Shown in pieces: positions 632 to 29,708 of a DNA stretch of 64,000 nt (positions within the stretch are counted from its first letter, which is position 1; the number at the start of each line of letters is the position of its first letter). The notes under the pieces are model-generated. The model did no database searches, was not told where the DNA came from, and saw only the letters and a list, made by a program, of their open reading frames with translations. The stretch is taken from positions 1 to 64,000 of IMG/VR virus record IMGVR_UViG_3300032268_000832; one strand, 5' to 3'. The position numbers and the translations under genes were made by a program.

Positions 632-671
632 TTTATTTCCATTCTATATATTTATTTATTTCTGAAAAAAT

Positions 672-700
672 CGACACTACTATTTGGTAGTGTCGGTTTT
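672..700 (+). terminator. intrinsic terminator overlapping the -33 box of the next promoter
   Basis: CGACACTAC-tatttg-GTAGTGTCG followed by TTTT. Confidence 0.7.
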
Positions 701-738
701 ATTCTTACCTTTGCACCACCAATTTAAAATAAAATGTT

Positions 739-1038
739 ATGGAACTATTAGTAGAACACATTGAATTAAACCACCCTTTGGCAAATGAGAATAGTACTTA
801 TAATGTCTTTTTAAAAGACAAGAAAGCCAAAAAACCTATCTTTGTTGCAGTTGAGAATAACGGAAAACAAAGACTTGAATTTGAGTTGTCAGGCGACCAT
901 AAATTGATTGCCAAGAATTTTAGAAAAGTAATTTTACAATATAGACTTGGTACTTTTACCGATGAAGACCAAGTAACCCTTGCTGATATTTTTATGTACG
1001 GCAAATTTAACTTATTGATTGACCATAACGTTAATTAA
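739..1038 (+). CDS. hypothetical early protein (99 aa)
   Basis: ATG 26 nt after promoter; followed by hairpin. Confidence 0.8.
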   Translation: MELLVEHIELNHPLANENSTYNVFLKDKKAKKPIFVAVENNGKQRLEFELSGDHKLIAKNFRKVILQYRLGTFTDEDQVTLADIFMYGKFNLLIDHNVN

Positions 1039-1055
1039 TTTAATTGGTGTGAACT

Positions 1056-1085
1056 TCCCGCAGAAATGCGGGATTTTCTTTTTAT
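1056..1085 (+). terminator. intrinsic terminator
   Basis: TCCCGC-agaaat-GCGGGA plus T-rich tail. Confidence 0.7.
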
Positions 1086-1165
1086 AAAAAAAAATGTTAA
1101 AATTTTTGGTAGTGTAAAATAATTGTTATACATTTGTATCGTTAAACCAATTAAATTATATCGTT

Positions 1166-1489
1166 ATGGATTATGTTAATAAAGTTCTTATTTCACTGAC
1201 CGACAATTATGGGTTTGAGTTTGGTAAGAATTACAAAGTTGTTTCTGACAATGGTCGAGAATTAGAATTTGAGAACGGACAACGTTTCTTCAAAGATAGA
1301 ATTGATTTGCATTTTGGCAAAAACTATTCAGAACTATTTGCCAAAGTAAAATATATTGTTGATACCAAAGAAATAGAAAACCATAAATTGTGTATTGAAA
1401 ATATTAGATTGGATAATAGAGTTATCAATAACAAAAAGAAGTTTGCCGAGAACGATAAGTATATCAACCGACTTAAAAAACTTTTGTAA
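1166..1489 (+). CDS. hypothetical early protein (107 aa)
   Basis: ORF behind promoter-leader repeat. Confidence 0.8.
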   Translation: MDYVNKVLISLTDNYGFEFGKNYKVVSDNGRELEFENGQRFFKDRIDLHFGKNYSELFAKVKYIVDTKEIENHKLCIENIRLDNRVINNKKKFAENDKYINRLKKLL

Positions 1490-1551
1490 ATATATTTGGT
1501 AGTGTAAAATATTTGTTATATCTTTGCATAGTTAAACCAATTAAATTAGTT

Positions 1552-1833
1552 ATGGCACATTCAAAAGAATTAATAGCTTTCAAAAAAAGTTTTGAAACCA
1601 ATACAAATATTAAAGTTTTTGGTGTTGAAGAAAATAGAACTTATTATCATTGGAAACGATTGATATTACCAAGTTTAAATTGTCAGGATATGTTAAAAGT
1701 TTCAAACTACATTTCAAACAATTTTTCAACACCAAATAAATTTACTCACTTACAAGTTTCATTGGGAACATATAATGGTAATTTAACCTTAACTTGTGAT
1801 GTTACATATATTAAAGAATTTATTATTAAATAA
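1552..1833 (+). CDS. hypothetical early protein (93 aa; start moved from 1513 to ATG 1552)
   Basis: The track's TTG start lies inside the promoter; ATG 1552 follows the conserved leader. Confidence 0.75.
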   Translation: MAHSKELIAFKKSFETNTNIKVFGVEENRTYYHWKRLILPSLNCQDMLKVSNYISNNFSTPNKFTHLQVSLGTYNGNLTLTCDVTYIKEFIIK

Positions 1834-1839
1834 CCCAGT

Positions 1840-1854
1840 GTACACATTTGTGTC
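1840..1854 (+). promoter_or_regulatory. second-class palindromic motif GTACACATTTGTGTC (also at 8743-8757, 11638-11652, variant 12108-12122)
   Basis: Interrupted palindrome ACACA-TT-TGTGT, 32-35 nt upstream of an ATG in three copies. Confidence 0.55.
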
Positions 1855-1886
1855 ATACACGTATAACCAATTAAATTAAATGACTT

Positions 1887-2306
1887 ATGTATGAAGTTAA
1901 TGAGATAGTAAAAGATTTAATAAAAACCGAAACAGGTATTGATATAAACGAAACAAGCCGATTAAGACCGATAGTTGAAATACGTTCACTTTATTATAAA
2001 ATAGTAAGGGAATTAGCACCAACACAAAGTTATCATCTTATTGGTAAGAGTGTGAAAAAAGACCACGCAAGCGTTATGTATGGTATTGCACAATTTGAGT
2101 TATATGCCAAGTATAATAAGCGTTTAATGTTACATTATCATAATATTAAAAATGCGTTCCTTAAACTTTATGACCATAACAATATTATTGCTTTGGATAT
2201 GGAAATTCAAATATTGGAGTATAAAATAAAAATGCTTAAAGAAAAAAGACTTGAATTAATTAATGCAACAATATTAGAGAATGGTGTTTCTGAACAGCAA
2301 GGGTAA
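1887..2306 (+). CDS. DnaA C-terminal (domain IV)-like HTH protein
   Basis: SRLRPIVEIRSLYYKIVRE...IGKSVKKDHASVMYG resembles the DnaA domain IV signature (IG..F.RDHTTV.HA). Confidence 0.6.
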   Translation: MYEVNEIVKDLIKTETGIDINETSRLRPIVEIRSLYYKIVRELAPTQSYHLIGKSVKKDHASVMYGIAQFELYAKYNKRLMLHYHNIKNAFLKLYDHNNIIALDMEIQILEYKIKMLKEKRLELINATILENGVSEQQG

Positions 2307-2394
2307 GGATTGGTATATTATAAAGGGATATAAAATATGGGCGGAAAGCAAAGAACAAGCCGAACAATTATATGAAAAAATAAAAAATTTTTAA
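2281..2394 (+). CDS. small hypothetical protein (37 aa, MVFLNSKGKDWYIIKGYKIWAESKEQAEQLYEKIKNF)
   Basis: Hand-translated; overlaps the previous gene's end and fills the gap before the next promoter. Confidence 0.45.
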   Translation: MVFLNSKGKDWYIIKGYKIWAESKEQAEQLYEKIKNF

Positions 2395-2462
2395 TAATAA
2401 ATTTGGTATATTAAAAAATTGTTATATATTTGCACTCACAAACCAATTAAATTTATTATATT

Positions 2463-2732
2463 ATGACAAGACAATTTACTGAAAGAATTGAATACAAAGG
2501 CACACGCTTTGAATCTAAAGTGGGTGTTGAATTTGACCAAGAAAATTGGAATGAGCTTTGGAATAAGGGTGTTATGAATGAAAACCAAATTGTATTGGCA
2601 AATGATTGGGAAACCACTTTTCCACCAAACAAATGGGGTACAAAGTATTCAAAGTATATGTATAGTGCAACGCTTGACAGATTAAGAGCGTGTACCTTTG
2701 GCGAGTTTTATGGTGGTGGTATCGTTGATTAA
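2463..2732 (+). CDS. hypothetical early protein (89 aa)
   Basis: ORF behind promoter-leader repeat. Confidence 0.8.
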   Translation: MTRQFTERIEYKGTRFESKVGVEFDQENWNELWNKGVMNENQIVLANDWETTFPPNKWGTKYSKYMYSATLDRLRACTFGEFYGGGIVD

Positions 2733-2744
2733 ATTAAATGACTT

Positions 2745-2951
2745 ATGAAACTATTAAAAAAATTAGTCAATTTAAACACTGGGTATTGGCTTGAAACACG
2801 TTTATATCAATACAAAGGTAAACTTGAAATTGGTTATGTTCTTTATCAAGGATATACCATATTTGGAATAAATGGTAAAGATAGAATTAATGTTTATGTT
2901 GATTTAAAAGACGCTAAAGAAGATTTAGAAAAACTTAATTTAACTGATTAA
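2745..2951 (+). CDS. hypothetical early protein (68 aa)
   Basis: Preceded by short leader ATTAAATTAAATGACTTATG. Confidence 0.75.
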   Translation: MKLLKKLVNLNTGYWLETRLYQYKGKLEIGYVLYQGYTIFGINGKDRINVYVDLKDAKEDLEKLNLTD

Positions 2952-2963
2952 ATTTAATAACTT

Positions 2964-3257
2964 ATGAAAAATAAAGAATTTGGGTTAGTATTAGATTTAA
3001 CTTGGTTAGAAACCAATGAAAGTGTGTTTGCAATATTGGAACGATTTGCAATTAATTTTTATCGTTTTGTTAATAACAAACACGAAATTAAATTAAATGA
3101 CGATAAAGATAAATTATGCGAGTTTCTTAAATCAAATAATATTGATTTCACTTGTGAAGTTAGCAGAGCAGATGAAAAAGATTTTTGGGTTTCATTTGAA
3201 TTAAAAGCTGATACCTATTTAGACGTTACAGACCGAATTGAATTAAGAGCAAGATAA
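2964..3257 (+). CDS. hypothetical early protein (97 aa)
   Basis: Preceded by ATTAAATTTAATAACTTATG leader. Confidence 0.75.
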   Translation: MKNKEFGLVLDLTWLETNESVFAILERFAINFYRFVNNKHEIKLNDDKDKLCEFLKSNNIDFTCEVSRADEKDFWVSFELKADTYLDVTDRIELRAR

Positions 3258-3269
3258 ATTAAATGGCTT

Positions 3270-3437
3270 ATGTTATACGATGAAAATAACCGAGTTATGA
3301 TTAACTCAATTAGTGAAGTAAACAACGCTAAATATAGAGTATCACTAAAAAGAAAAATTAGAAAATTTATACCTAAAGTATTACATAGTTCAATTAATAA
3401 TTTAAGTACAGAAACTTTAGAAAATATTTCATTTTAA
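3270..3437 (+). CDS. hypothetical early protein (55 aa, below track cut-off)
   Basis: Leader ATAAATTAAATGGCTTATG; hand translation MLYDENNRVMINS...ENISF. Confidence 0.6.
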   Translation: MLYDENNRVMINSISEVNNAKYRVSLKRKIRKFIPKVLHSSINNLSTETLENISF

Positions 3438-3508
3438 TATAAAAATATTTGGTAGTTTAAAATATTGTTATATCTTTGCACTCACAAACCAATTAAATTA
3501 AATGTATT

Positions 3509-4006
3509 ATGGAAAATTCAATTTTAAATTACGACTTAACAACATTAAAAAATATTGTTAATAAAAAAAATGTTAATGAAATTATTTTTAAAATTTTTGA
3601 TGACGATAAAAAACCAAATTGGACACCATTAATAAAAGTGGCTACTTTAAAAAAGAAAAGAGAAGAAAATTTAAGATACAATGGGGTTGTTAGTTCGTTT
3701 AATTCTAATGACGATTATAAGTTAGCTAAACTACTTATCAATAGTGGTGCTGATTTAAACTATCAAGATAAAAACGGAAATACCGCTTTGATTTATTGTG
3801 TTTATTATAATAATATTAAATTATTAAAATTATTAATTAAGTCAGGTGCTGATTTGAACATAAAAGATAATAATGGTTCAAGTGCATTAATAATTGCGGG
3901 TTATTCAAATAAATTTAATATTGGCGACATTTTAATTAAGTCAGGTGCTGACCAAAGAATAAAAAATAATAACGGAGATAATTATAGTATCTTTTTAAAT
4001 AAATGA
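3509..4006 (+). CDS. ankyrin-repeat protein
   Basis: Repeats LLINSGADLNYQDKNGNTAL / LLIKSGADLNIKDNNGSSAL / ILIKSGADQRIKNNNG. Confidence 0.9.
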   Translation: MENSILNYDLTTLKNIVNKKNVNEIIFKIFDDDKKPNWTPLIKVATLKKKREENLRYNGVVSSFNSNDDYKLAKLLINSGADLNYQDKNGNTALIYCVYYNNIKLLKLLIKSGADLNIKDNNGSSALIIAGYSNKFNIGDILIKSGADQRIKNNNGDNYSIFLNK

Positions 4007-4299
4007 AATACATAGACGATTTAAGTTTCTCAAACATTATCAATTTGATACAAGGAGAAGAAATAAAAGGTGCTGATATTCTAAATAATATCGCACACGA
4101 AATGGAAGAAAATAATAAAATAATTGAAAAACTTGAAAGCGATTTGGCTCGTGCTAAAAGTCGTAAAGGTGTTTTAATTGAAGGTTCTCAAAGAGTATTA
4201 CAACACTTGAAAAAAGAATATCCGTTAGCAGTTCAAAGGAATGGTTACATAGTTGTGGTTACAAAAGAAAAAATATCAATTGAACGCAATGTCTTGTAG
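4003..4299 (+). CDS. hypothetical protein (98 aa, coiled-coil), followed by attC-like hairpin
   Basis: ORF track; overlaps ankyrin gene stop. Confidence 0.7.
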   Translation: MKYIDDLSFSNIINLIQGEEIKGADILNNIAHEMEENNKIIEKLESDLARAKSRKGVLIEGSQRVLQHLKKEYPLAVQRNGYIVVVTKEKISIERNVL

Positions 4300-4304
4300 C
4301 ATTA

Positions 4305-4440
4305 CTGCCAACGTTTGATGATTGTATTAGTAGCGTTCTAAAATTACCAAACGTTTCAGATTAAAAATTAGATTACAATAAAACGCAAAACATTAAATTA
4401 TTCACAAACGTAGCTATTGATACAATTATTTGTTAGTAGC
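4305..4440 (+). mobile_element. solo attC-like inverted-repeat element
   Basis: CTGCCAAC-gttt-[18 bp stem 4317-4334 / 4413-4430, four G-T pairs]-t-GTTAGTAG. Confidence 0.5.
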
Positions 4441-4460
4441 TGTGTTTAAATTCAAAAATT

Positions 4461-4688
4461 ATGGAAAAATCAGCAGTACAATTTTTAGTGATAAAATTAG
4501 AAGAATTAATGTTAAAAAATGACTTCAATGAAATTTCAGATGAAGAATATTTGAAAGAAAAAGAAAATATTTTGATTATATCTAAACATAAAGAAAAAGA
4601 AAATATGATTAACTTTTTAAAGTCAGTTTTTCAACAAGAAAATTTTGATTATGAAAAAGCTTATAACGATTTTTTAAAACAAAAGTAA
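4461..4688 (+). CDS. hypothetical protein (75 aa)
   Basis: ORF starts 20 nt after the attC-like site. Confidence 0.75.
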   Translation: MEKSAVQFLVIKLEELMLKNDFNEISDEEYLKEKENILIISKHKEKENMINFLKSVFQQENFDYEKAYNDFLKQK

Positions 4689-4689
4689 A

Positions 4690-4887
4690 ATGATAAAAGT
4701 AAATTTAAAATTAATTAGTGAATTTCTCCCGTCAAAAGAAGAAGAAATTGAAATTACATTAGCTGAAATTATTGAATTAGCTAAAGAAAAAATAAAAAAT
4801 CAATATGAAAATGATGTTTATAATACTATTATTTATAAAGGATTTTCTTTTACAGATTCATTAAAAGAAAAAGAAGATATAAAATAA
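4690..4887 (+). CDS. hypothetical protein (65 aa)
   Basis: Tightly coupled ORF. Confidence 0.65.
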   Translation: MIKVNLKLISEFLPSKEEEIEITLAEIIELAKEKIKNQYENDVYNTIIYKGFSFTDSLKEKEDIK

Positions 4888-4944
4888 TTTTTTTATTTCG
4901 GAAATATTTCATATATTTGCATAACAATTTAAAAACAAATAGAA

Positions 4945-5400
4945 ATGAAACTAATAAAAATGACAGATTATATTTCACAAAAAAGAGATATAATAGACGA
5001 AGAAATGAGTAACGAAGACAGATTAACTATTTTACAATGTATTTTTGATTATAGTAAATTTTTAAAGACACCCTTAAAGTTAGATATGTTTATCCCTTGT
5101 GATGAAAAAATGAACATTTTAAAAAAACCTAAAAACAAAAGTAATTTAGGTAGTGGAAAAACTGATAGCGTTGAATTGTTAAAATACGAAAACAAGTTAA
5201 GAGATTACAGTTTTGCACTATCAAAGGTGTTATTTAAAGATTTTCATTTACACAAAGATGATGAAGATAACTTTAAAAAATGTGTTGCTACTCCTGGTTT
5301 TGTTTTACCATTTGAAGTATTATACACAATGAAAATTGAGGATATAGTTGATAACGATATTAAACTTACAAGTTTCGGACTTGCCACAATACATCAATAA
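4945..5400 (+). CDS. hypothetical protein (151 aa)
   Basis: ORF after a degenerate TAtaTTTG promoter. Confidence 0.8.
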   Translation: MKLIKMTDYISQKRDIIDEEMSNEDRLTILQCIFDYSKFLKTPLKLDMFIPCDEKMNILKKPKNKSNLGSGKTDSVELLKYENKLRDYSFALSKVLFKDFHLHKDDEDNFKKCVATPGFVLPFEVLYTMKIEDIVDNDIKLTSFGLATIHQ

Positions 5401-5509
5401 TTTAGTATAGTGTTTGTCGAAAATAAATAAAAAAGTTTTTAATAATTGTTTGGTAGTTTAATTAATTGTTATATATTTGCACTCACAAACCAATTAAATT
5501 TATTTAGTT

Positions 5510-5716
5510 ATGAGCAAATATCAAACAAAAATAGTTGACGCATTAAAAAACGGAGCTAAATTACAATGCACAGAGGGTGCTAATTATAAAACGTGGTTAG
5601 TTTACCCTAATGGTAAAATAGAAAATATTAGACGTGATTCAGCAAATAAAGTTTGTTTAGATTATGAAAATAAATTAGTGTTTGGGTTAAATGAGGGTAT
5701 AAGTTGGAAAAAATAA
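5510..5716 (+). CDS. hypothetical early protein (68 aa)
   Basis: ORF behind promoter-leader repeat. Confidence 0.8.
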   Translation: MSKYQTKIVDALKNGAKLQCTEGANYKTWLVYPNGKIENIRRDSANKVCLDYENKLVFGLNEGISWKK

Positions 5717-5726
5717 TTTTAATAAA

Positions 5727-5933
5727 ATGGAAGTCAAGTTAAAAAATGATGGCGAAAAAACCCCTAAAAGTATTCAAGCTGAAATTGAATTGAATAATAA
5801 AACAGATGATTGGGGTTATTTTAATCTTAAAATAATTGGATATGGAGGGAATGTTACACACGCTAAAATTAACTTAAAATATCAAATAGATGATTTAATT
5901 ACTGAACTACAAAATTTTAAAAATAGTTTATAA
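5727..5933 (+). CDS. hypothetical protein (68 aa)
   Basis: ORF track, A-rich leader. Confidence 0.7.
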   Translation: MEVKLKNDGEKTPKSIQAEIELNNKTDDWGYFNLKIIGYGGNVTHAKINLKYQIDDLITELQNFKNSL

Positions 5934-6003
5934 TTTATAATCTATACACACCAATATAGTTAAATTTTCGTTTTTTCAGTATATTTATATATAAAAAAAT
6001 AGT

Positions 6004-6264
6004 ATGGAAAACGAAATGAGAAAACACATTGACAAGTTTAATAATTTTATTAAAGAAGATATTATTAATAAAGGGGTTAAAACATCAACTAGGTTAGTTC
6101 AAGTTGATTATGAAGGTAAAAAAATGAACGCTGTTGCTATTGGATACGCATCTGGTCCTTATTTTAAGGAAGTTTATTATTTATTAGACGATATTCAATA
6201 TGATAATAATGATTTTAATAATGTAAAAGAAATTAATGGCTCGGATTTAATTATTGGTAGTTAA
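6004..6264 (+). CDS. hypothetical protein under a late-type promoter (86 aa)
   Basis: ATATTTAT at 5981-5988; N-terminus MENEMRKHIDKFNNFIKE ends in I-x-E. Confidence 0.75.
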   Translation: MENEMRKHIDKFNNFIKEDIINKGVKTSTRLVQVDYEGKKMNAVAIGYASGPYFKEVYYLLDDIQYDNNDFNNVKEINGSDLIIGS

Positions 6265-6280
6265 TTTTTTTTGGTATTAT

Positions 6281-6368
6281 ATAAATTAAATAACCCACTT
6301 AAAAAAAAGTGGGTTATTTATTTGGTATATTAAAATATTGTTATATCTTTGCACTCACAAACCAATTA
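6281..6368 (+). repeat. 88 bp perfect direct repeat, copy 1 (terminator + promoter + leader)
   Basis: Identical to 11033-11120; contains hairpin AATAACCCACT/AGTGGGTTATT. Confidence 0.9.
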
Positions 6369-6426
6369 TAAAAGTACAAAACAGAAAACAAATTAATAAC
6401 CAAAGCCTTAATTGCTACAATATATT

Positions 6427-6717
6427 GTTATGCATTCGGCTTTTTATCCACAATTATTATGGCAATTAAAATAGATGAATCACAGGAATATTTATTTGAA
6501 AAAAATCAAAATGTATGTGTTGTAGGTAAATTTCCAATCAATGCGACAAGATTATTTGTAACTAAACAAAAGAAAATAATAAAAGGCTATTGCACTTCTT
6601 GGTGGCAAAATGGTGGTCATTTTAAATCTTCTTTTTTGATTCTAAACGAAAGTTGCTCACAAGCTGATGCATAACGTTTTGCGTATAAAAAATCGTTTTA
6701 ATGTTTTTTATACGATG
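6427..6717 (+). mobile_element. integron-cassette-like unit 1 (one ORF plus attC-like hairpin)
   Basis: Starts GTTATGCATTCGGCTT; the gene ends in the complementary AAGCTGATGCATAAC (stop TAA inside TAAC); 11 bp stem 6682-6692/6704-6714; next GTT at 6717. Confidence 0.6.
6459..6674 (+). CDS. cassette-borne hypothetical protein (71 aa)
   Basis: Stop codon embedded in the TAAC inverse-core-like box. Confidence 0.7.
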   Translation: MAIKIDESQEYLFEKNQNVCVVGKFPINATRLFVTKQKKIIKGYCTSWWQNGGHFKSSFLILNESCSQADA

Positions 6718-6909
6718 TTATAAGATAGTATTTTTTGTGATAAAAGAAGCACCAAATGGTTGCTCAATGTAAAGATACCAACAATAAGGGTAGCGGGTGT
6801 ACAAAAGACCGTTTTAATACTATTTCGTTGGGTTTGGGTGGATGAAACTATAACTGCGGTTGAAACGTACCGTTCACAAAAAATATTTTTTATAACTAAT
6901 ATATGTTAT
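6717..6909 (+). mobile_element. integron-cassette-like unit 2 (non-coding or mini-ORF cargo)
   Basis: Start GTTATAAGATAGTATTTTTTGTG (6717-6739) pairs with end CACAAAAAATATTTTTTATAAC (6875-6896); followed by GTTAT at 6905. Confidence 0.55.
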
Positions 6910-7046
6910 TAATATTTGTTAACATTAATGAAATCAATACTTTAGTATAGTGTTTGTCGAAAATAGATAAAAAAGTTTTCTAAATATTTGGTAGTTTAAA
7001 ATATTGTTATATCTTTGCATCGTTAAACCAATTAAATTATATCGTT

Positions 7047-7205
7047 ATGAGTTCAAATAAAATGATTAAAAAATTATTATCAATAAATAATAATTATAAT
7101 AAAAAATGGTTAAAATCTTTATCTAAAGATTATTTAAACAAATTACTTATTGATAATATGATTATATCACAAGGTTGTCAAAATAAATTGATGTTAAATT
7201 TTTAA
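7047..7205 (+). CDS. hypothetical early protein (52 aa)
   Basis: ATG directly after promoter-leader 6987-7046; hand-translated. Confidence 0.55.
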   Translation: MSSNKMIKKLLSINNNYNKKWLKSLSKDYLNKLLIDNMIISQGCQNKLMLNF

Positions 7206-7219
7206 TTTTAAAATTAATT

Positions 7220-7630
7220 ATGGCTACAATAGAAAAAAAAGAATTTGCTTTATCACAATTAGCACCTTATTACGCTAACCCAAGCACTTGTGGGTATGAT
7301 AAAGAAAAGAAAACTTGTGAATACCTTACAACCGATGGGCGTATGTGTGTTGCAGGAAAGAATATGATTGAACCTAAAATTGGTTTAGTCAAGGGTATTG
7401 ATGATATACTTGCTGATTTAGACCACGAACAAGAGGGTTTATTTAAACCCGAAGTTGTTGGAATTTTAACATCAGTTGAATGGCGACGTATGCAATGTAT
7501 TCACGATAGTATTGCATTAGAACCAAACGACAAAGTTAGACTTAAAGTAACAATATTGCGATTAAATTTATTCACGATTGAAGAATTTGAGGAACGTGCA
7601 GAATTATTAAAAAATAATTTGGTAGTTTAA
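7220..7630 (+). CDS. hypothetical protein (136 aa)
   Basis: ORF track; Cys motifs CGY, CEY, CVAG. Confidence 0.8.
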   Translation: MATIEKKEFALSQLAPYYANPSTCGYDKEKKTCEYLTTDGRMCVAGKNMIEPKIGLVKGIDDILADLDHEQEGLFKPEVVGILTSVEWRRMQCIHDSIALEPNDKVRLKVTILRLNLFTIEEFEERAELLKNNLVV

Positions 7631-7677
7631 ATAATTGTTATATCTTTGCACTCACAAACCAATTAAATTAAATTGAT

Positions 7678-7956
7678 ATGAATTTAGTAGATAAAAGCGA
7701 ATTAGGAAATATTGAAGAAACTAAAATAATAGAATATAAAAATGGTGTTATTCAAGGTATTAAATTAGTTAGAACTAAAGCAACAGGGGAAGTTAGAACA
7801 CAATATATTGCTTATTTAAAACATAGTGTTTACCCAAGTGGAATTTTACGTTTTGAAACTTGTTTAAATGGTGGTGTTATTACAAACGTAAATCAAGCAA
7901 TTAACCAAGCAAAAATATTTGTTGATTGGAAAACAACAAAAGATTTGGTAAATTAA
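7678..7956 (+). CDS. hypothetical early protein (92 aa)
   Basis: ORF behind promoter-leader repeat. Confidence 0.8.
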   Translation: MNLVDKSELGNIEETKIIEYKNGVIQGIKLVRTKATGEVRTQYIAYLKHSVYPSGILRFETCLNGGVITNVNQAINQAKIFVDWKTTKDLVN

Positions 7957-8005
7957 AATAATTGTTATATCTTTGCACTCACAAACCAATTAAAACACTT
8001 AAACA

Positions 8006-8221
8006 ATGAAAAAATTAGTAGTATTATTTATCGTTTCAATAACATTCGTTTCTTGTTATTCAACCAAAGAAATTGTTGATGTACCATTAAAAGATGTTTA
8101 CATTCAATATAAAGAAACTAAATATCAAGTGTATAGATGTAGTGATAAATTTAATTATATTCTTAAATTAGACAAAAAAGGTAGATTGATTAGACAACAA
8201 GTTTATCTTGGTATAAAATAA
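8006..8221 (+). CDS. putative lipoprotein (71 aa)
   Basis: MKK + hydrophobic stretch + lipobox FVS-C17. Confidence 0.7.
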   Translation: MKKLVVLFIVSITFVSCYSTKEIVDVPLKDVYIQYKETKYQVYRCSDKFNYILKLDKKGRLIRQQVYLGIK

Positions 8222-8273
8222 ATATTTTTATATATTTGCACTCACAAACCAATTAAATTAAATTAAATGTATT

Positions 8274-8597
8274 ATGGCAGTTACTAATAGATACGCAAAA
8301 AGACTTCTTTTGGTTGATGAACTAATCAAGTTGAAGTATGATGTTTCCCCGAAGAAAATTAGTCCAAGAAAAAAGAGTTATATTATATCGAAAGATAATA
8401 TAATTTATAGAATGGATTTTAATACTGATTGGGTTACAATTAATCAAGACCAAGATAAATTGTATTGCGGAATAAATTTATTGAGTGGTAAAAGAATTGC
8501 TAATTGTATGGATAATCATTTGGTAAAGTTATTTAATGATGTTGTAGGTATTTTATATAATAAAACTAATATTAACGTACCAACAATTATTTTATAA
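8274..8597 (+). CDS. hypothetical early protein (107 aa)
   Basis: ORF behind promoter-leader repeat. Confidence 0.8.
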   Translation: MAVTNRYAKRLLLVDELIKLKYDVSPKKISPRKKSYIISKDNIIYRMDFNTDWVTINQDQDKLYCGINLLSGKRIANCMDNHLVKLFNDVVGILYNKTNINVPTIIL

Positions 8598-8663
8598 AAA
8601 TATTTGTGAGTGTAAATTATTTGTTATATATTTGCACTCACAAACTAAATTATTCAGTTATAT

Positions 8664-8741
8664 ATGAAAACTAAAAAAATTAAATGGCACAAATATTTTA
8701 TTGTTGCCTTTGGTATATGGTTAATAAATTTATTATCATAG
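8664..8741 (+). CDS. small membrane peptide (25 aa, MKTKKIKWHKYFIVAFGIWLINLLS)
   Basis: Has its own promoter (8603-8634); basic N-terminus plus hydrophobic helix. Confidence 0.55.
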   Translation: MKTKKIKWHKYFIVAFGIWLINLLS

Positions 8742-8825
8742 TGTACACATTTGTGTCTATTACGCGTAGTACTCATTAAATTAAATTATATGACAACGAT
8801 ATATAAACCAACAAATTAAAAAAAA

Positions 8826-9152
8826 ATGAAAGTATTAACAGCAGAATTAGTAGCATCGAATAAAAGAGAACGAATCTCTGGCGGTGTCTACATTGAATTT
8901 GAAACAACTGAAAATGTGAAAAAAGATGACTACTTTAAAGTAAAAGTAGAAGACTTTAGTTATGATTTTCAAGCAAATGGAGTAAAAGTAGAAGGGGATA
9001 AATTGAAAGTAACAGCAAGAGAAGTTGGATATTGGGCACAAAAACTTGACAGAAAGGGCGTTGATTTGAGATTAGTTATCGGAAGCGATGTAATTGCTGT
9101 TACTGATGAATCAGAAAAGTCTAAAATATACGAAAGGTCTTGTTGGTGTTAA
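8826..9152 (+). CDS. hypothetical protein (108 aa)
   Basis: ORF track. Confidence 0.8.
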   Translation: MKVLTAELVASNKRERISGGVYIEFETTENVKKDDYFKVKVEDFSYDFQANGVKVEGDKLKVTAREVGYWAQKLDRKGVDLRLVIGSDVIAVTDESEKSKIYERSCWC

Positions 9153-9169
9153 CAAATGTATTTAATTAT

Positions 9170-9224
9170 GGTAAAGTAAAATAATTGTTATATCTTTGCA
9201 CTCACAAAACCAATTAAATTTATT
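9170..9224 (+). repeat. 55 bp perfect direct repeat, copy 1 (copy 2 at 9617-9671), flanking one gene
   Basis: GGTAAAGTAAAATAATTGTTATATCTTTGCACTCACAAAACCAATTAAATTTATT in both copies. Confidence 0.9.
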
Positions 9225-9229
9225 CAGTT

Positions 9230-9610
9230 ATGATAATACAAATAAAACAATACAAATATGAGAAGACCGAAACGTCTTCAATGGATTTAGAGTTGCCAGA
9301 AGAAACGACTTATTTTTTTGAAACTCACGTTAGACGTTCAATAAGAATTAAACCCATATTCACAACGTGGAACAAGGTACGATACGACAAAGAAGAAGAA
9401 TTGTATTATTTTGAGGTTACTTGTGTTTATTTGTCTTCTAAATGTAAGATTGAGAAGTTTAGAGTTAATTTAGACGATTTCAAAAAAGATAAAGAGGTAA
9501 TTCAAAAGGATAACTTTTTAAATGCGTGGGTTAATGATTGGTTTGACAAGCGAACCAAAGAGCAGTTTGATGTTGATTTGAAAATAGCTATTGATAAAAT
9601 AAATGAATAA
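9230..9610 (+). CDS. hypothetical early protein (126 aa)
   Basis: ORF behind promoter-leader repeat. Confidence 0.8.
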   Translation: MIIQIKQYKYEKTETSSMDLELPEETTYFFETHVRRSIRIKPIFTTWNKVRYDKEEELYYFEVTCVYLSSKCKIEKFRVNLDDFKKDKEVIQKDNFLNAWVNDWFDKRTKEQFDVDLKIAIDKINE

Positions 9611-9676
9611 TTATTTGGTAAAGTAAAATAATTGTTATATCTTTGCACTCACAAAACCAATTAAATTTATTGTATT

Positions 9677-10066
9677 ATGAAAATCAATTTAGTAGAAGTA
9701 CCAAGACCAATGGTAAGCAGTTTTATGATGTTTGCTGAACCTGACTTAAATTTATTAAGAGAAACCAAAACAATAAGAGTTTCTTTTCATCACATTACCA
9801 AAACAAGAATTTCAACAAGTATTCAGTTTGGAGAATATTGTGTTAAAGCCAATAAATTTATTGACGGATATAAAATGCACAAAGACGTACAATGGAATCA
9901 TTTTAGTAGCGGACAACAAACAAGCCATTATTTTGTTAAATCAAAAAAACAAAATTATGATGTTTATAAAGAGTTTGTCATTAAATTAATTGAGAGCGTA
10001 ATAAAAGATAATTTCAAAATGGAATTAGACGAAATTACCATTAATTTGGAACAAAGAGAATTTTAA
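9677..10066 (+). CDS. hypothetical early protein (129 aa)
   Basis: ORF behind promoter-leader repeat. Confidence 0.8.
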   Translation: MKINLVEVPRPMVSSFMMFAEPDLNLLRETKTIRVSFHHITKTRISTSIQFGEYCVKANKFIDGYKMHKDVQWNHFSSGQQTSHYFVKSKKQNYDVYKEFVIKLIESVIKDNFKMELDEITINLEQREF

Positions 10067-10149
10067 CAAAATTTTAACATTTTCCCACTTGTATTAGTGG
10101 GAAATTGTTTTACCTTTGCACTCACAAAACCAATTAAATTTATTGAATT

Positions 10150-12323: not shown

Positions 12324-12537
12324 CACGTATGCGTGTAGCGTGTGTATGTGTGTGTATGTATGCGTGTAGCGTGTGTATGTGTGTGTATGTATGTGCGTAG
12401 CGTGTGTATGTGTGTGTATGCGTGTGTATGCGTGTGTATGCGTGTGTATGCGTGTGTATGCGTGTGTATGTGTGTGTATGCGTGTGTATGCGTGTGTGCG
12501 TAGCGTGTGTGCGTAGCGTGTGTGTGCGTATGCGTGT
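12324..12537. repeat. alternating purine-pyrimidine (TG/CG/TA) microsatellite-like tract
   Basis: Units TATGCGTGTAGCGTGTGTATGTGTGTGTATG and CGTGTGTATG repeated. Confidence 0.9.
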
Positions 12538-20714: not shown

Positions 20715-21950
20715 ATGGGAAGACAAATTAACAAAGAAAAAGTCCTTGAAGAAAAGGGTGAGGTTAAACAATACACGTTATTTCAAGAAAATAGGTCACC
20801 TAAATTAGATTGGTTGTTGGATGTTTATAAGAAAGACCCTTACAAGGCGCGCGTTTTGTATTTTAATAACATTGGGTCTTTTTATTTAGAGCGAAAAGTT
20901 TGTTTTGAAAGGACAGATGGTAGTTTTGAAATTTGCAATTTTAGAAGAACATTTGGCATGACAAAAACCAATAGAATTTATTCTAGAGAAAAGAAAATTA
21001 ATTCGTTGATTTACAAAAACAAAAAGTTTTATTTTAAAAATGGTTCGTCTATTAAACACGCTATGTATGTTGATGTTGCATATCATTTTAATTTTGCCTT
21101 AAATTTTTTACAGACAAAATTTACGTGGATTAGAAATATAAAAGAGAATAAGTATTGTCATAACATTTCATTTTCATCAATTATGACGTATAAATTATTC
21201 AACGCGGATAAAATAATGAAACATTTATATAAGGCACCAACATCTGTAATTAAAACGTTGACCACTGAATATGAACAAAAATCATCTGGCTATGGTTATA
21301 TTTCAAAATTTGAATGGAAAAGAATTAGCCCATATTTAATAAACATTGAAAATTTGAAAACAGAATTTTTTACAAATCATTTGTTTAGGGACACGATTGA
21401 AATGGCGATTAAGTTAGACAAAAAAATTAACTGTTCATGGTCTGATAAAAGACTTAAACATGAACACGATACATGGGCTAAAGAACTACGAAAAATAATG
21501 CTTGAGTTTGAACCAGTGATTGAATTAAACCCTCACAGAATATTTGAAGACTTTGAAAAGTTTACTGGATACAAAATGCTTAGAACCAATCATGATTTGA
21601 TTGAGGAAGGACATAGACAAGACCATTGTGTTGCTGGTTATGGTAGTTCAGTATCAAATGGTTATTGTGGAATTTATCAAGTTAGCGGATACACACTTGA
21701 GGTTAGTTACAGACAAGATTATGGTATTGGTATTAAATCAAACAATCAAAAAACATTACACTATTCTCAGTTAAGAGGTTATAAAAATTGCTCAGCACCT
21801 AAAGAATTAGATGACACTGTTAAATCTTACATTGAAGCATTTAACACTAAATATAATTTTGATGAGTATGAAAAATACTTAAAACAACAAGAAAATACTG
21901 TTCAAGCAGTGTTTAGAGAAATAGAAGAAGTAAATTATCTTCCATTTTAA
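20715..21950 (+). CDS. PcfJ domain-containing protein
   Basis: DLIEEGHRQDHCVAGY...TLEV...QLRGYKN; host-type promoter TAtcTTTG at ~20679-20686. Confidence 0.75.
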   Translation: MGRQINKEKVLEEKGEVKQYTLFQENRSPKLDWLLDVYKKDPYKARVLYFNNIGSFYLERKVCFERTDGSFEICNFRRTFGMTKTNRIYSREKKINSLIYKNKKFYFKNGSSIKHAMYVDVAYHFNFALNFLQTKFTWIRNIKENKYCHNISFSSIMTYKLFNADKIMKHLYKAPTSVIKTLTTEYEQKSSGYGYISKFEWKRISPYLINIENLKTEFFTNHLFRDTIEMAIKLDKKINCSWSDKRLKHEHDTWAKELRKIMLEFEPVIELNPHRIFEDFEKFTGYKMLRTNHDLIEEGHRQDHCVAGYGSSVSNGYCGIYQVSGYTLEVSYRQDYGIGIKSNNQKTLHYSQLRGYKNCSAPKELDDTVKSYIEAFNTKYNFDEYEKYLKQQENTVQAVFREIEEVNYLPF

Positions 21951-28313: not shown

Positions 28314-29708
28314 ATGGAAAAAGGTTTAACGGATAGATTAGTGTTTTTAGCTGAAACATTTGATGTTTTTGATTGTTCTTCAGATGAACTTCAAAAAAAG
28401 ATTAGTGGTTTTGAAAAAGAAAACTATGAAGTTCAGACAGTTTATTATGAGCAAAATGTAATTGCGTTGGTTTCATCAAAGGTAAACAACAAAGACCGTA
28501 TCATTAAGAAAGTTAGTGTTTGTATGGATGTTTTTTCTGAAATGATTGCTGCTGACCCAACTAAAAATAAGATGTATGTTCAGTGGATGCTTAACATGTT
28601 TTCTCGTTTTATGAAAGATGTTAAATCACAAGTTTATGGTATTAGGTTAGTTGGTGAAGATTTACCTCAAGCTGAGATGTATTTAAAGTTATTTGAAGAT
28701 AACAAAAGAAAGAAAAAATTTAAAGATTTATGTCTTGGTAGCTATTCATTGAAAGGTATAACGGACCCTACTGATATTAACCAATACAAATCTCTTTCAC
28801 AATTATTTGATTCGGTTGACCCGTTCATTGAAAGAGATGCTAGTGTAATTGAAAGAACCATTATGAAGTATGTAGATTTAGGTAAAGCGTATATTCCTGT
28901 TAAAGACAGAAAATTTACAGTTTATGTTCCTTTGACTTTAGACGCTTCAGTTGTGTTTGCAAAACACGCTAACTGGTGTACAGCTAGGGAAGGTAATGGT
29001 ATGTTTAAAAGTTATACAGAATCATACAAAACACCAGATGGTAAAAAATCTAAGTTATATGTTATCATAAACAACAAATTTTTTAGTGGGGAGTCAGATG
29101 AAATTTTTCAAGTTCATTTTGAGACAAACCAATTAAAAGATAGAAAAAATAGTCAAAACGTTACAATTTTTGAAAACGTTATGGCTGAAAGTGAAGGGGT
29201 TGCAAATTTTTTTAAAGAAGAGTTGTTAGTTTTAGCTAAGAATAAAAAAACAGTAAAACAAAATACGTATTTAGATTATTTATTAAAATTTGGTTTTGCC
29301 GAATCATTATTTGAATTATTGGAAGAAGATACACCTATTATTAAATTTATGGACCGAGAAATACCTAGAATCCCAAATGTTTCTAAATTTAAAAATTTGG
29401 ACCAGATAATTATTACTGGTGCTAAATTACAAGAGTTAGACCCTTCTGTTGGTGAATTAACTAAATTATCTATGTTAGTGTTAGCAAATAATAAATTAAT
29501 TTCTTTGCCAAGTGAGATTGGTAGTTTAAAGAATTTAGAGTTTTTAAATTTAAAAGGAAACAATATTAAATCGATACCTAATGAGATTTCTAATTTAGAT
29601 AAATCCAAAGGTGGTTCGTTATATCGCATAGTTGTTGATAAAAACGATATAGGAGATGAAAATTATAAAAAACTAAAAGAGTTGTTACCAACAACTAATT
29701 TTAATTAA
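28314..29708 (+). CDS. PcfJ-related WCT domain fused to leucine-rich repeats
   Basis: KHANWCTAR; LSMLVLANNKLISLPSEIGSLKNLEFLNLKGNNIKSIPNEISNL. Confidence 0.85.
   Translation: MEKGLTDRLVFLAETFDVFDCSSDELQKKISGFEKENYEVQTVYYEQNVIALVSSKVNNKDRIIKKVSVCMDVFSEMIAADPTKNKMYVQWMLNMFSRFMKDVKSQVYGIRLVGEDLPQAEMYLKLFEDNKRKKKFKDLCLGSYSLKGITDPTDINQYKSLSQLFDSVDPFIERDASVIERTIMKYVDLGKAYIPVKDRKFTVYVPLTLDASVVFAKHANWCTAREGNGMFKSYTESYKTPDGKKSKLYVIINNKFFSGESDEIFQVHFETNQLKDRKNSQNVTIFENVMAESEGVANFFKEELLVLAKNKKTVKQNTYLDYLLKFGFAESLFELLEEDTPIIKFMDREIPRIPNVSKFKNLDQIIITGAKLQELDPSVGELTKLSMLVLANNKLISLPSEIGSLKNLEFLNLKGNNIKSIPNEISNLDKSKGGSLYRIVVDKNDIGDENYKKLKELLPTTNFN

What the first reader, a model, noticed from the sequence alone, without database searches (positions are those of the whole stretch)
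4305..4440. Solo attC-like element with an 18 bp stem whose four deviations are all G-T pairs
Seen: AAC-gttt-GATGATTGTATTAGTAGC ... GCTATTGATACAATTATT-t-GTT, directly after a stop codon and 20 nt before the next ATG. It shares AACGTTT and a longer-left spacer with the 6673 site. Four of four mismatches are top-strand wobbles, which argues for selection on a single-stranded structure. Inference: a remnant of the same cassette system or an RNA processing stem.
Basis: partly seen in the sequence, partly recalled or inferred. Interest (0 to 1): 0.6.

Follow-up and report, generated by a model that had tools for sequence, protein, structure and literature searches.

The report
Integron-type recombination site in jumbo phage
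The stem-loop is real and is one diverged copy of a large family of attC-like recombination sites that separate gene cassettes in Flavobacterium phages and chromosomes; here it marks a joint where foreign genes were spliced into a 306-kb phage.

Summary
The 18-bp stem (4317-4334 with 4413-4430; 14 Watson-Crick plus 4 G-T pairs) is there as described. Alone it is weak evidence: about 0.25 such stems are expected per shuffled window. Homologues settle it. A covariance model scores 4301-4444 at 62.7 bits (E about 1e-14), and the 6673 site is a short-loop copy. About 75 copies fill the intergenic gaps of early operons in Flavobacterium phages. Hundreds more form arrays of up to 25 kb in Flavobacterium chromosomes, headed by a tyrosine recombinase gene. 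The arms covary strongly; only TAAC...GTTA, one G-T pair and one mismatch stay fixed. Breaks in similarity between phages fall on the TAAC core, where an integron integrase would cut.

Best reading: an attC-type cassette boundary, with the window's + strand as the "bottom" strand, left at a mosaic joint. The phage holds two copies and no recombinase.

Two departures from classical integrons:
- The array recombinase is Xer-like and lacks the integron-specific insert.
- In phages the genes run in the inverted direction relative to the site.

An RNA role in the phage is neither excluded nor shown. Phage attC clusters were reported in 2023; I found no description of this family.

The parts
4003..4299 (+). 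Upstream cassette-type gene (98 aa, function unknown, PHROG 37199).
   Evidence: 77% nucleotide identity to Flavobacterium phage FCL-2, running to 4318. In five viral contigs its homologues are bracketed by family elements. They share sequence up to the TAAC core only.
4305..4312 (+). 5' half of the base helix, with the core CAAC (TAAC in nearly all relatives) at 4309-4312. This is the inferred crossover core, equivalent to the attC R box on the bottom strand.
   Evidence: AAC is invariant in alignments A2, A3 and A6. Similarity to other phages starts or stops here.
4313..4316 (+). Left-side unpaired spacer GTTT (G4313 may pair with T4431).
   Evidence: A 3-4 nt spacer lies on the 5' side only in all copies.
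4317..4334 (+). Left arm of the long helix.
   Evidence: Pairs with 4413-4430. The arms differ between copies but stay complementary.
4335..4412 (+). 78-nt A-rich loop (variable terminal structure) with the box AACATTAAATTA at 4389-4400.
   Evidence: Loop length is 71-74 nt in most copies and the box is conserved.
4413..4430 (+). Right arm of the long helix.
   Evidence: T4417 is the partner in the family-invariant G-T pair (39 of 39 bacterial copies and 9 of 9 phage copies).
4431..4440 (+). T plus core GTTA (4432-4435) plus the 3' half of the base helix.
   Evidence: TGTTA is invariant.
4441..4460 (+). Short leader with TTTAAATT before the ATG. It travels with the element.
   Evidence: Similarity to lillamy-type phages and L025/L028 runs from 4310 through 4468-4528.
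4461..4688 (+). Downstream gene (75 aa, unknown function), linked to the element.
   Evidence: Its first 68 nt are co-linear with the element in L025 (82% identity over 4310-4528).
6671..6721 (+). Second, short-loop copy: ATAACGT, TTTG, an 11-bp arm, an 11-nt loop, the second arm, ATGTTAT. The TAA of its core (6672-6674) is the stop codon of gene 6459-6674.
   Evidence: Model R1 gives 15.4 bits, E 0.011. The DNA fold has z -2.4. It is 88% identical to L028:1072-1146.

Best explanation
Window 4305-4440 is a complete, AT-rich, somewhat decayed copy of an attC-type recombination site, about 127 nt from core CAAC to core GTTA. Sites of this family separate gene cassettes in two settings: long Flavobacterium chromosomal arrays headed by a tyrosine recombinase gene, and the early operons of many Flavobacterium phages.

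The window's + strand corresponds to the recombinogenic "bottom" strand. It reads 5' core (T/C)AAC, a short unpaired spacer, a long imperfect helix with a fixed G-T pair, a variable loop, then 3' core GTTA.

Inferred mechanism: when that strand is single-stranded it folds. The recombinase binds the folded site, cuts in the TAAC core and exchanges strands with another such site, so cassettes are inserted, lost or swapped.

Shown here: family membership, conserved structure, array organisation, linkage to the recombinase gene, and crossovers mapping to the TAAC core.

Inferred: catalysis by that recombinase, and folding of this particular copy.

In this jumbo phage the site marks a mosaic joint. 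An FCL-2-like gene lies to its left. The site, its leader and the start of the next gene resemble those of other freshwater Flavobacterium phages. With only two copies and no recombinase gene in the phage, it is most likely a footprint of cassette traffic, possibly still usable with a host enzyme, rather than part of an active array.
For: Family membership
- Model R1 was built from nine other copies. It scores window 4301-4444 at 62.7 bits on the + strand (E about 1e-14), against 4.6 bits or less on the - strand.
- The intergenic stretch alone is 80.5% identical to unrelated siphophages, while the flanking genes are not.

Structure under selection
- In A4, 95.6% of cells are paired against about 45% when the partners are slid, and 10 of 25 pairs show double changes.
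- In 39 independent bacterial copies, 87% are paired against 30-47% slid, 21 of 25 pairs show double changes, AAC and GTT are present in 39 of 39, and one G-T pair is present in 39 of 39.

Arrays
- There are 11 and 13 copies in the leftward early operons of lillamy9-1 and hemulen6-1, and none in the other 26 kb of lillamy9-1.
- About 28 copies span 25 kb in F. fragile.
- 85 of 121 sampled Flavobacterium genomes have matches.

Recombinase linkage
- Tyrosine recombinase genes head the F. fragile arrays (L050:162-1199, L054:12235-13338).
- Orthologues lie in the same relative position next to arrays in G037, G029 and G092.

Crossovers
- 31 of 37 similarity breakpoints near elements lie within -10 to +15 nt of the TAAC core, and 3 lie in the rest of the element.
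- Homologues of gene 4003-4299 agree up to ...TAAC and differ from the next base onward.
- In the window, the FCL-2 match ends at 4318 and the other matches start at 4310.

Published parallel
- Phage-borne attC clusters that carry methyltransferase cassettes are described in PMC9892861. Its P12002L attC1 has the same TAACG...TGTTAG layout and sits between two methyltransferase genes.
Against: - No recombination was observed; catalysis is inferred from gene linkage.
- The linked recombinase lacks about 42 residues where VchIntIA has its integron-specific part. It scores below the integron-integrase cut-off (204.9 against 265 bits).
- The phage has no tyrosine recombinase and only two copies.
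- With DNA energy parameters the window copy does not form the long hairpin on either strand. 79% of phage copies do.
- In all phage loci the genes are sense to the model strand, the reverse of chromosomal arrays. A pure DNA-site model does not explain this.
- The published P12002L attC1 did not recombine with IntI1.
- Standard attC detectors could not be run here.
Confidence: 0.68

Rival explanations
1. In phages the element works mainly as RNA. It is transcribed inside the early polycistronic message and folds into a 25-30 bp helix, which would serve as a processing site (RNase III type), a 3' stabiliser, an attenuator, or a device bringing the stop codon close to the next start. The recombination history would then be secondary.
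For: - All of about 75 phage copies are sense to the genes.
- G-U pairs are twice as common on the sense strand in phages (213 against 108). The ratio is 122 against 96 in bacterial copies.
- The window copy forms the long stem as + strand RNA but not with DNA parameters.
- The element has no copy of the phage's own promoter cassette, so it lies inside an operon running 3509-4887.
- The stop codon is often the TAA of the core and the ATG follows within 20-35 nt.
- Loop length is held at 71-74 nt and the loop carries a leader-like box.
Against: - The same family, with the same invariant G-T pair, lies antisense to genes in chromosomal arrays, so the conserved fold is not tied to the transcript.
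- The two strands are equally stable across the family.
- There is no Rfam match.
- No RNA contig covers the element in two metatranscriptomes, which is uninformative rather than negative.
- This reading does not explain why breakpoints sit on a 4-nt core.
Confidence: 0.22
2. A PeSL-like mobile regulatory cassette: a terminator stem-loop plus a promoter that shuffles genes by ordinary homologous recombination between copies, as in T4-type phages.
For: - It runs from stop codon to start codon in a hyperplastic early region of a T4-like phage and sits at mosaic joints.
- PeSLs have this layout (PMC2839356, PMC4122927).
Against: - There is no Bacteroidetes -33/-7 promoter in 4300-4460, while the phage's real promoter cassette is obvious in at least 14 other gaps.
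- No T-run follows the stem.
- Breakpoints are confined to the TAAC core rather than spread over the conserved 100 nt.
- The family also forms recombinase-linked chromosomal arrays.
Confidence: 0.06
3. A selfish miniature inverted-repeat or REP-like element that spread by transposition, or a chance inverted repeat.
For: - It has long terminal inverted repeats around an AT-rich centre and is multi-copy.
- The stem alone is within chance.
Against: - Copies within one genome are about 50% diverged yet keep pairing through compensatory changes.
- There are no target-site duplications and no near-identical bursts.
- There is one site per gene in uniform orientation.
- Covariance-model E of about 1e-14 excludes chance.
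Confidence: 0.03

Closest known systems
Integron attC sites, and clusters of attC sites without an integrase (CALINs) in phage genomes (Qi et al. 2023, PMC9892861; IntegronFinder papers 10.1101/030866 and 10.1101/2022.02.28.482270).
   Same: - Imperfect palindrome with conserved AAC...GTT cores, an unpaired spacer, sequence-variable but complementary arms and a variable loop, 50-145 nt in all.
- One site per cassette in co-oriented arrays beside a tyrosine recombinase gene.
- Crossover in the core.
- Cassettes are mostly ORFans, methyltransferases and defence genes.
- Polaribacter phage P12002L attC1 has the same layout.
   Different: - The linked recombinase aligns end to end with XerA-type enzymes and lacks the integron-specific insert.
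- The recombinase is co-oriented with the cassettes.
- The 7-nt core consensus is only partly met.
- Most copies keep a loop of about 72 nt with a conserved box.
- In phages the genes are inverted relative to the site, so a cassette reads site-then-gene.
- Flavobacterium phages are not named in the main text or in the one supplementary file held of the 2023 phage survey; the survey's own table of phages is not in that file.
PeSL mobile regulatory cassettes of T4-type phages (Arbiol et al. 2010; Comeau et al. 2014).
   Same: Repeated intergenic stem-loop modules that run from stop to start codon in hyperplastic early regions and mark modular gene exchange.
   Different: PeSLs carry a host-type promoter and act as terminators, and their exchange is homologous across the element. 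Here there is no promoter, the crossovers fall on a 4-nt core, and there is a chromosomal counterpart with a recombinase.
RNase III processing hairpins between the early genes of phage T7 (from general knowledge).
   Same: Long imperfect helices with an internal loop between most genes of an early operon. Structure is conserved more than sequence.
   Different: No cleavage evidence here. The conserved TAAC/GTTA cores, the long conserved loop and the antisense chromosomal copies are not expected for RNase III sites.

Membership tests
Integron attC site | Inverted core sites with conserved AAC (5') and GTT (3') triplets. | tested here: met
   Window CAAC 4309-4312 and GTTA 4432-4435. AAC and GTT are invariant in A2, A3 and A4 and in 39 of 39 bacterial copies.
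Integron attC site | Full 7-nt cores RYYYAAC / GTTRRRY (consensus taken from the literature). | tested here: inconclusive
   The window reads TGCCAAC and GTTAGTA, two deviations each. Relatives read, for example, GCTAAC/GTTAGC and TATAAC/GTTATA, with partial complementarity beyond the triplets.
Integron attC site | Second pair of arms that vary in sequence but stay complementary, with an unpaired spacer and unpaired or odd positions that give the site polarity. | tested here: met
   Compensatory changes in 10 of 25 and 21 of 25 pairs. There is a 3-4 nt spacer on one side only, an invariant G-T pair, a near-invariant C-A mismatch and a one-base bulge.
Integron attC site | Variable terminal loop; overall length roughly 57-141 bp (range from the literature). 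| tested here: met
   127 nt core to core in the window. Loops range from 4 to 124 nt across copies.
Integron attC site | One site per cassette, in co-oriented arrays adjacent to the recombinase gene. | tested here: met
   Met for the family. Not met in this phage, which has two copies 2.3 kb apart and no recombinase.
Integron attC site | Cassette boundary or crossover inside the core (top strand G|TT, equal to bottom strand AA|C). | tested here: met
   Breakpoints cluster on TAAC of the model strand, resolved to within the 4-5 nt core. The exact phosphate cannot be told.
Integron (platform) | Integrase of the IntI clade with its specific extra domain. | tested here: not met
   TIGR02249 scores 204.9 bits against a cut-off of 265, in two pieces. 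There are 20 residues where VchIntIA (2a3v) has 62. The protein aligns continuously with XerA structures 4a8e and 5hxy. NF040815 scores 223 against a cut-off of 220.
Integron attC site | Recognised by the standard attC models (IntegronFinder, HattCI) and recombined in an attC x attI assay. | not testable with these tools
   The models are not available here and this is a bench assay. The 2023 phage survey names no Flavobacterium phage in the text held.
PeSL regulatory cassette | Host-type early promoter inside the element. | tested here: not met
   The phage's -33 TTTG / -7 TAnnTTTG cassette is present in at least 14 gaps but absent from 4300-4460.
RNase III-type processing site | Helix of about 20 bp or more in the transcript, with mapped cleavage. 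| tested here: inconclusive
   The helix is present as + strand RNA. No RNA contigs cover the element.
Any Rfam family | Match to a curated covariance model. | tested here: not met
   No match at gathering score in the window, nor at E up to 1 in 4200-4560.

The most novel reading that the evidence does not exclude
Flavobacterium and its phages share an integron-like cassette system that differs from classical integrons. It would be run by a Xer-type recombinase without the IntI domain and would use about 130-nt attC-like sites with a conserved loop. It is present in most sampled Flavobacterium species as arrays of up to 25 kb, and in phages as dense arrays in which the genes are inverted relative to the sites. 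In this reading phages and host arrays trade cassettes (methyltransferases, defence and counter-defence genes), the folded site may double as an RNA element in phage messages, and the window's element is a footprint of that traffic in a T4-like jumbo phage.
Probability: 0.45. Interest if true: 0.8.

Novelty: new variant of a known kind. Interest (0 to 1): 0.62.

Why it matters
Integrons are known mainly from Proteobacteria, and their presence in phages was reported only recently and as rare.

If this reading holds, an integron-like cassette exchange system is common in a major freshwater and fish-associated genus and densely populates its phages. That would give a concrete route by which phages and hosts swap methyltransferases, defence genes and orphan genes.

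It would also show that structure-specific cassette recombination does not require the canonical IntI domain.

For this genome, it explains a mosaic joint in the early region and links a jumbo T4-like phage to the gene pool of small Flavobacterium siphophages.

Tried and rejected
- Megablast of 3500-7500 against phage records found nothing. Only the sensitive mode found relatives.
- No tRNA or tmRNA and no Rfam match.
- AACGTTT and the loop box are not enriched in the window.
- BLAST of the element against its own genome found no second copy.
- A loose hairpin descriptor (AACG...TGTTA with 9 of 10 pairs) gave 13 further hits in the genome. I take these for chance because they lack the rest of the motif.
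- RNAalifold on the MAFFT alignment of unequal-loop copies predicted no pairs, so the structure was written by hand on a cleaner alignment.
- With default filters the model missed the window's own copy; filters off found it.
- Four of 17 viral pattern hits gave no model R1 match and showed no long stem when folded, and 14 of the 18 genome pattern hits gave no R1 match; I treat them as chance matches.
- Promoter reading of TTGTTA-N14-TTTAAA was rejected: the spacing and motif do not fit the Bacteroidetes consensus or the phage's own promoters.
- IS200/IS605-type ends and MITEs were considered from memory and dropped, because the arms pair with each other and covary.
- Lillamy9-1 has no annotated integrase, and gp001 has no Pfam match.
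- Metatranscriptome contigs do not cover the element. One DNA run from another lake carries it unchanged.
- One literature search timed out. Searches for Flavobacterium integrons or integron-like arrays found nothing specific.

Full report
**Setting.** The window is the first 64 kb of a single 306,463-bp viral record from IMG/VR (CheckV completeness 86%). GC content is 24-36%. It encodes T4-type terminase, portal and major capsid proteins. Its nearest cultured relatives by portal protein and by small early genes are phages of Flavobacterium and other freshwater bacteria. The same DNA occurs in lake and freshwater metagenomes from 12 studies. The first 10 kb is a run of small + strand genes.

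**The observation.** It is correct to the base.
- Arms 4317-4334 and 4413-4430 form 18 pairs: 14 Watson-Crick and 4 G-T on the + strand.
- The helix resumes outside a left-side spacer (GTTT) as CAAC/GTTA and a few more pairs, out to 4305/4440.
- The stop codon is at 4297-4299 and the next ATG at 4461.

Taken alone this is not beyond chance.
- Shuffled windows give 0.25 such stems on average.
- The RNA fold z-score is -1.34.
- The shared heptamer AACGTTT is at its expected frequency.

**Homologues.** A sensitive DNA search showed that the intergenic stretch by itself (4310-4468) is 80.5% identical to an intergenic stretch of the unrelated Flavobacterium siphophages lillamy9, morran9, sniff9 and snork. 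The upstream gene (4003-4299) instead matches F. columnare phage FCL-2 at 77% identity, up to 4318.

FCL-2 carries a version of the element with the same end boxes and loop box but quite different arms that still pair. A pattern scan of viral contigs gave 13 more copies.

From nine of these I built covariance model R1 with a hand-written structure. On that alignment:
- 95.6% of cells pair, against about 45% when the partners are slid.
- 10 of 25 pairs show compensatory double changes.

R1 then found about 75 sense-strand copies in 20 loci.
- Lillamy9-1 has 11 and hemulen6-1 has 13, filling nearly every intergenic gap of the leftward early operon.
- There are none in the remaining 26 kb of lillamy9-1.

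With filters off, R1 scores window 4301-4444 at 62.7 bits (E about 1e-14). It scores the 6673 site (6664-6729) at 15.4 bits as a short-loop copy. No other credible copy exists in the 306 kb.

**Anatomy, read on the gene strand of the phages**:
- A semi-conserved flank.
- Core TAAC, whose TAA is often the upstream gene's stop codon.
- A 3-4 nt spacer on this side only.
- An arm of about 21 nt, with one bulge, a near-invariant C-A mismatch and an invariant G-T pair.
- A loop, usually 71-74 nt and A-rich, with an AAACATTAAATTAAT box.
- The second arm, then (T)GTTA.
- 20-35 nt of leader, then ATG.

The window's four G-T pairs compare with the family as follows:
- G4330-T4417 is the family-invariant G-T.
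- G4317-T4430 is G-T in all nine modelled phage copies.
- T4328-G4419 is shared by the closest relatives.
- G4320-T4427 is private to the window; its relatives have A-T.

**Where exchanges happen.** Lillamy9-1 and hemulen6-1 differ by blocks whose ends fall on the TAAC core. Across 14 loci, 31 of 37 similarity breakpoints lying within 200 nt of an element are within -10 to +15 nt of the T of TAAC. Only 3 lie in the remaining 110-150 nt of the element.

Blocks that begin do so at position 0 or up to 8 nt earlier. Blocks that end do so at +3 to +15. The shared core is therefore TAAC(G).

Homologues of window gene 4003-4299 in five viral contigs agree up to ...GGCTAAC and differ from the next base onward. 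One of them has no element after TAAC.

In phages the exchanged unit is therefore site, leader, then gene, ending in the next TAAC. The window fits this: L025 shares 4310-4528, that is, the site and the start of the next gene.

**Chromosomal arrays.** The same pattern scanned over bacterial genomes hit Flavobacterium assemblies. In F. fragile HXWNR69, R1 finds about 28 co-oriented copies over 25 kb on one contig and shorter arrays on two others.

There the genes are antisense to the model strand, so each gene is followed by a site in the classical gene-then-attC order.

Two arrays begin with a 345-367 aa tyrosine recombinase gene that is co-oriented with the cassettes. Orthologues (59-70% identity) sit in the same relative position beside arrays of 16-25 kb in three other genomes.

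85 of 121 sampled Flavobacterium species genomes have matches at E of 1e-6 or better, although only 26 candidates per genome were scored.

The 39 F. fragile copies were not used to build the model. They give:
- 87% pairing, against 30-47% when slid.
- 21 of 25 pairs with double changes.
- AAC and GTT in 39 of 39 copies.
- One G-T pair in 39 of 39 copies.

Cassette genes are mostly ORFans. Identified ones include a GmrSD-type endonuclease, an outer-membrane barrel protein and a LinB-like nucleotidyltransferase.

With genes on the opposite strand, the model strand is the "bottom" strand of integron usage. Its 5' TAAC crossover equals the top-strand G|TT boundary of integron cassettes.

**Comparison with what is known.** The layout matches integron attC sites: inverted AAC/GTT cores, an unpaired spacer, covarying arms, a variable loop, one site per cassette, crossover in the core, and a neighbouring tyrosine recombinase.

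Phage-borne attC clusters were described in 2023. They include a Flavobacteriaceae phage (Polaribacter P12002L) with methyltransferase cassettes (PMC9892861). Its attC1 oligonucleotide maps between two methyltransferase genes, sense to them, with the same TAACG...TGTTAG-leader-ATG layout. R1 finds two further copies in that genome.

The departures are these.
1. The recombinase is not a canonical integron integrase.
   - It aligns without a gap to XerA structures.
   - It has 20 residues where VchIntIA has 62.
   - It is below the TIGR02249 cut-off.
2. In phages the gene orientation relative to the site is inverted in every locus.
3. The long loop is conserved in length and in part in sequence.
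4. The 2023 survey names no Flavobacterium phage in its main text or in the one supplementary file held. The IntegronFinder papers report only In0 elements and a Salinibacter integron for Bacteroidetes.

I could not run the standard attC models. Whether they miss this family is therefore open.

**DNA or RNA.** Family-wide the picture is mixed.
- G-U pairs are twice as frequent on the sense strand in phage copies (213 against 108).
- They are only slightly more frequent on the model strand in bacterial copies (122 against 96).
- Fold energies of the two strands are about equal.
- The invariant G-T keeps its place on the model strand whether genes are sense or antisense. This ties it to the site, not to the transcript.
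- The window copy is unusual. As RNA the + strand forms the long helix. With DNA parameters neither strand does, whereas 79% of phage copies do.
- The window copy lies inside an operon, because the phage's own promoter cassette is absent from 4300-4460 although it is obvious in at least 14 neighbouring gaps.

An added RNA role in phages is therefore plausible but untested. Two metatranscriptomes gave no contig over the element. A DNA run from another lake carries it unchanged.

**Verdict.** It is a footprint of a cassette system shared by Flavobacterium phages and chromosomes.
- Family membership: confidence about 0.95.
- Recombination-site function: about 0.7.
- An additional or alternative RNA function in phages: about 0.2-0.35.

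The element itself is probably a relic at a mosaic joint in this phage. The system it points to appears undescribed for Flavobacterium in the literature I could search.

Noticed in passing
window 632-10149 (for example 3438-3508, 5401-5509, 7631-7677, 9611-9676): At least 14 intergenic gaps carry one repeated early-promoter cassette: TTTGGTA...TTGTTATATCTTTGCACTCACAAACCAATTAAATT...ATG. This is a Bacteroidetes-type -33 TTTG / -7 TAnnTTTG promoter plus a conserved leader, a PeSL-like repeated regulatory module of this phage.
   Followed up: partly
window 12338-12502: GT-rich tandem repeat of GCGTGTGTAT-like units, which dominates any wobble-tolerant stem search.
   Followed up: no
window 33069-35570 (-), 28314-29708 (+), 20715-21950 (+): The phage encodes a full-length ClpB-type two-ring AAA+ chaperone, a leucine-rich-repeat protein and a PcfJ-like protein.
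   Followed up: no
G001 (Flavobacterium fragile) C23:1-26900, C22, C7 (loci L050-L054); also G037:C1:3735792-3762987, G029:C12:208063-228396, G092:C1:206237-243516: Chromosomal arrays of up to 25 kb of the same sites. Each is headed by a Xer-like tyrosine recombinase that lacks the integron-specific insert. Matches occur in 85 of 121 sampled Flavobacterium species.
   Followed up: partly
L050:3100-4460: Inside the F. fragile array, one stretch has 29-30% GC, genes on the same strand as the sites, and sites close to those of lillamy9-1. It looks like phage-type cassettes sitting in a host array.
   Followed up: partly
L010 (lillamy9-1) 4090-4236 and 8342-8488; L011 (hemulen6-1) 2695-2836: In some copies the next gene's ATG lies in the loop, so the right arm encodes the protein's N-terminus (methyltransferase gp009, gp024, hemulen gp005). 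Tiny annotated ORFs gp006 and gp011 lie inside elements and are probably not genes.
   Followed up: partly
L054:11219-11989 (-): The first cassette after the F. fragile recombinase encodes a LinB-like / streptomycin-type nucleotidyltransferase, a resistance-like gene in an environmental array.
   Followed up: no
window 4922-5122, 5981-6049, 6671-6745: Further short stretches of the jumbo phage's early region are shared with small Flavobacterium siphophages and viral contigs (lillamy gp017 region; L028). The whole region is therefore a mosaic of that gene pool.
   Followed up: no
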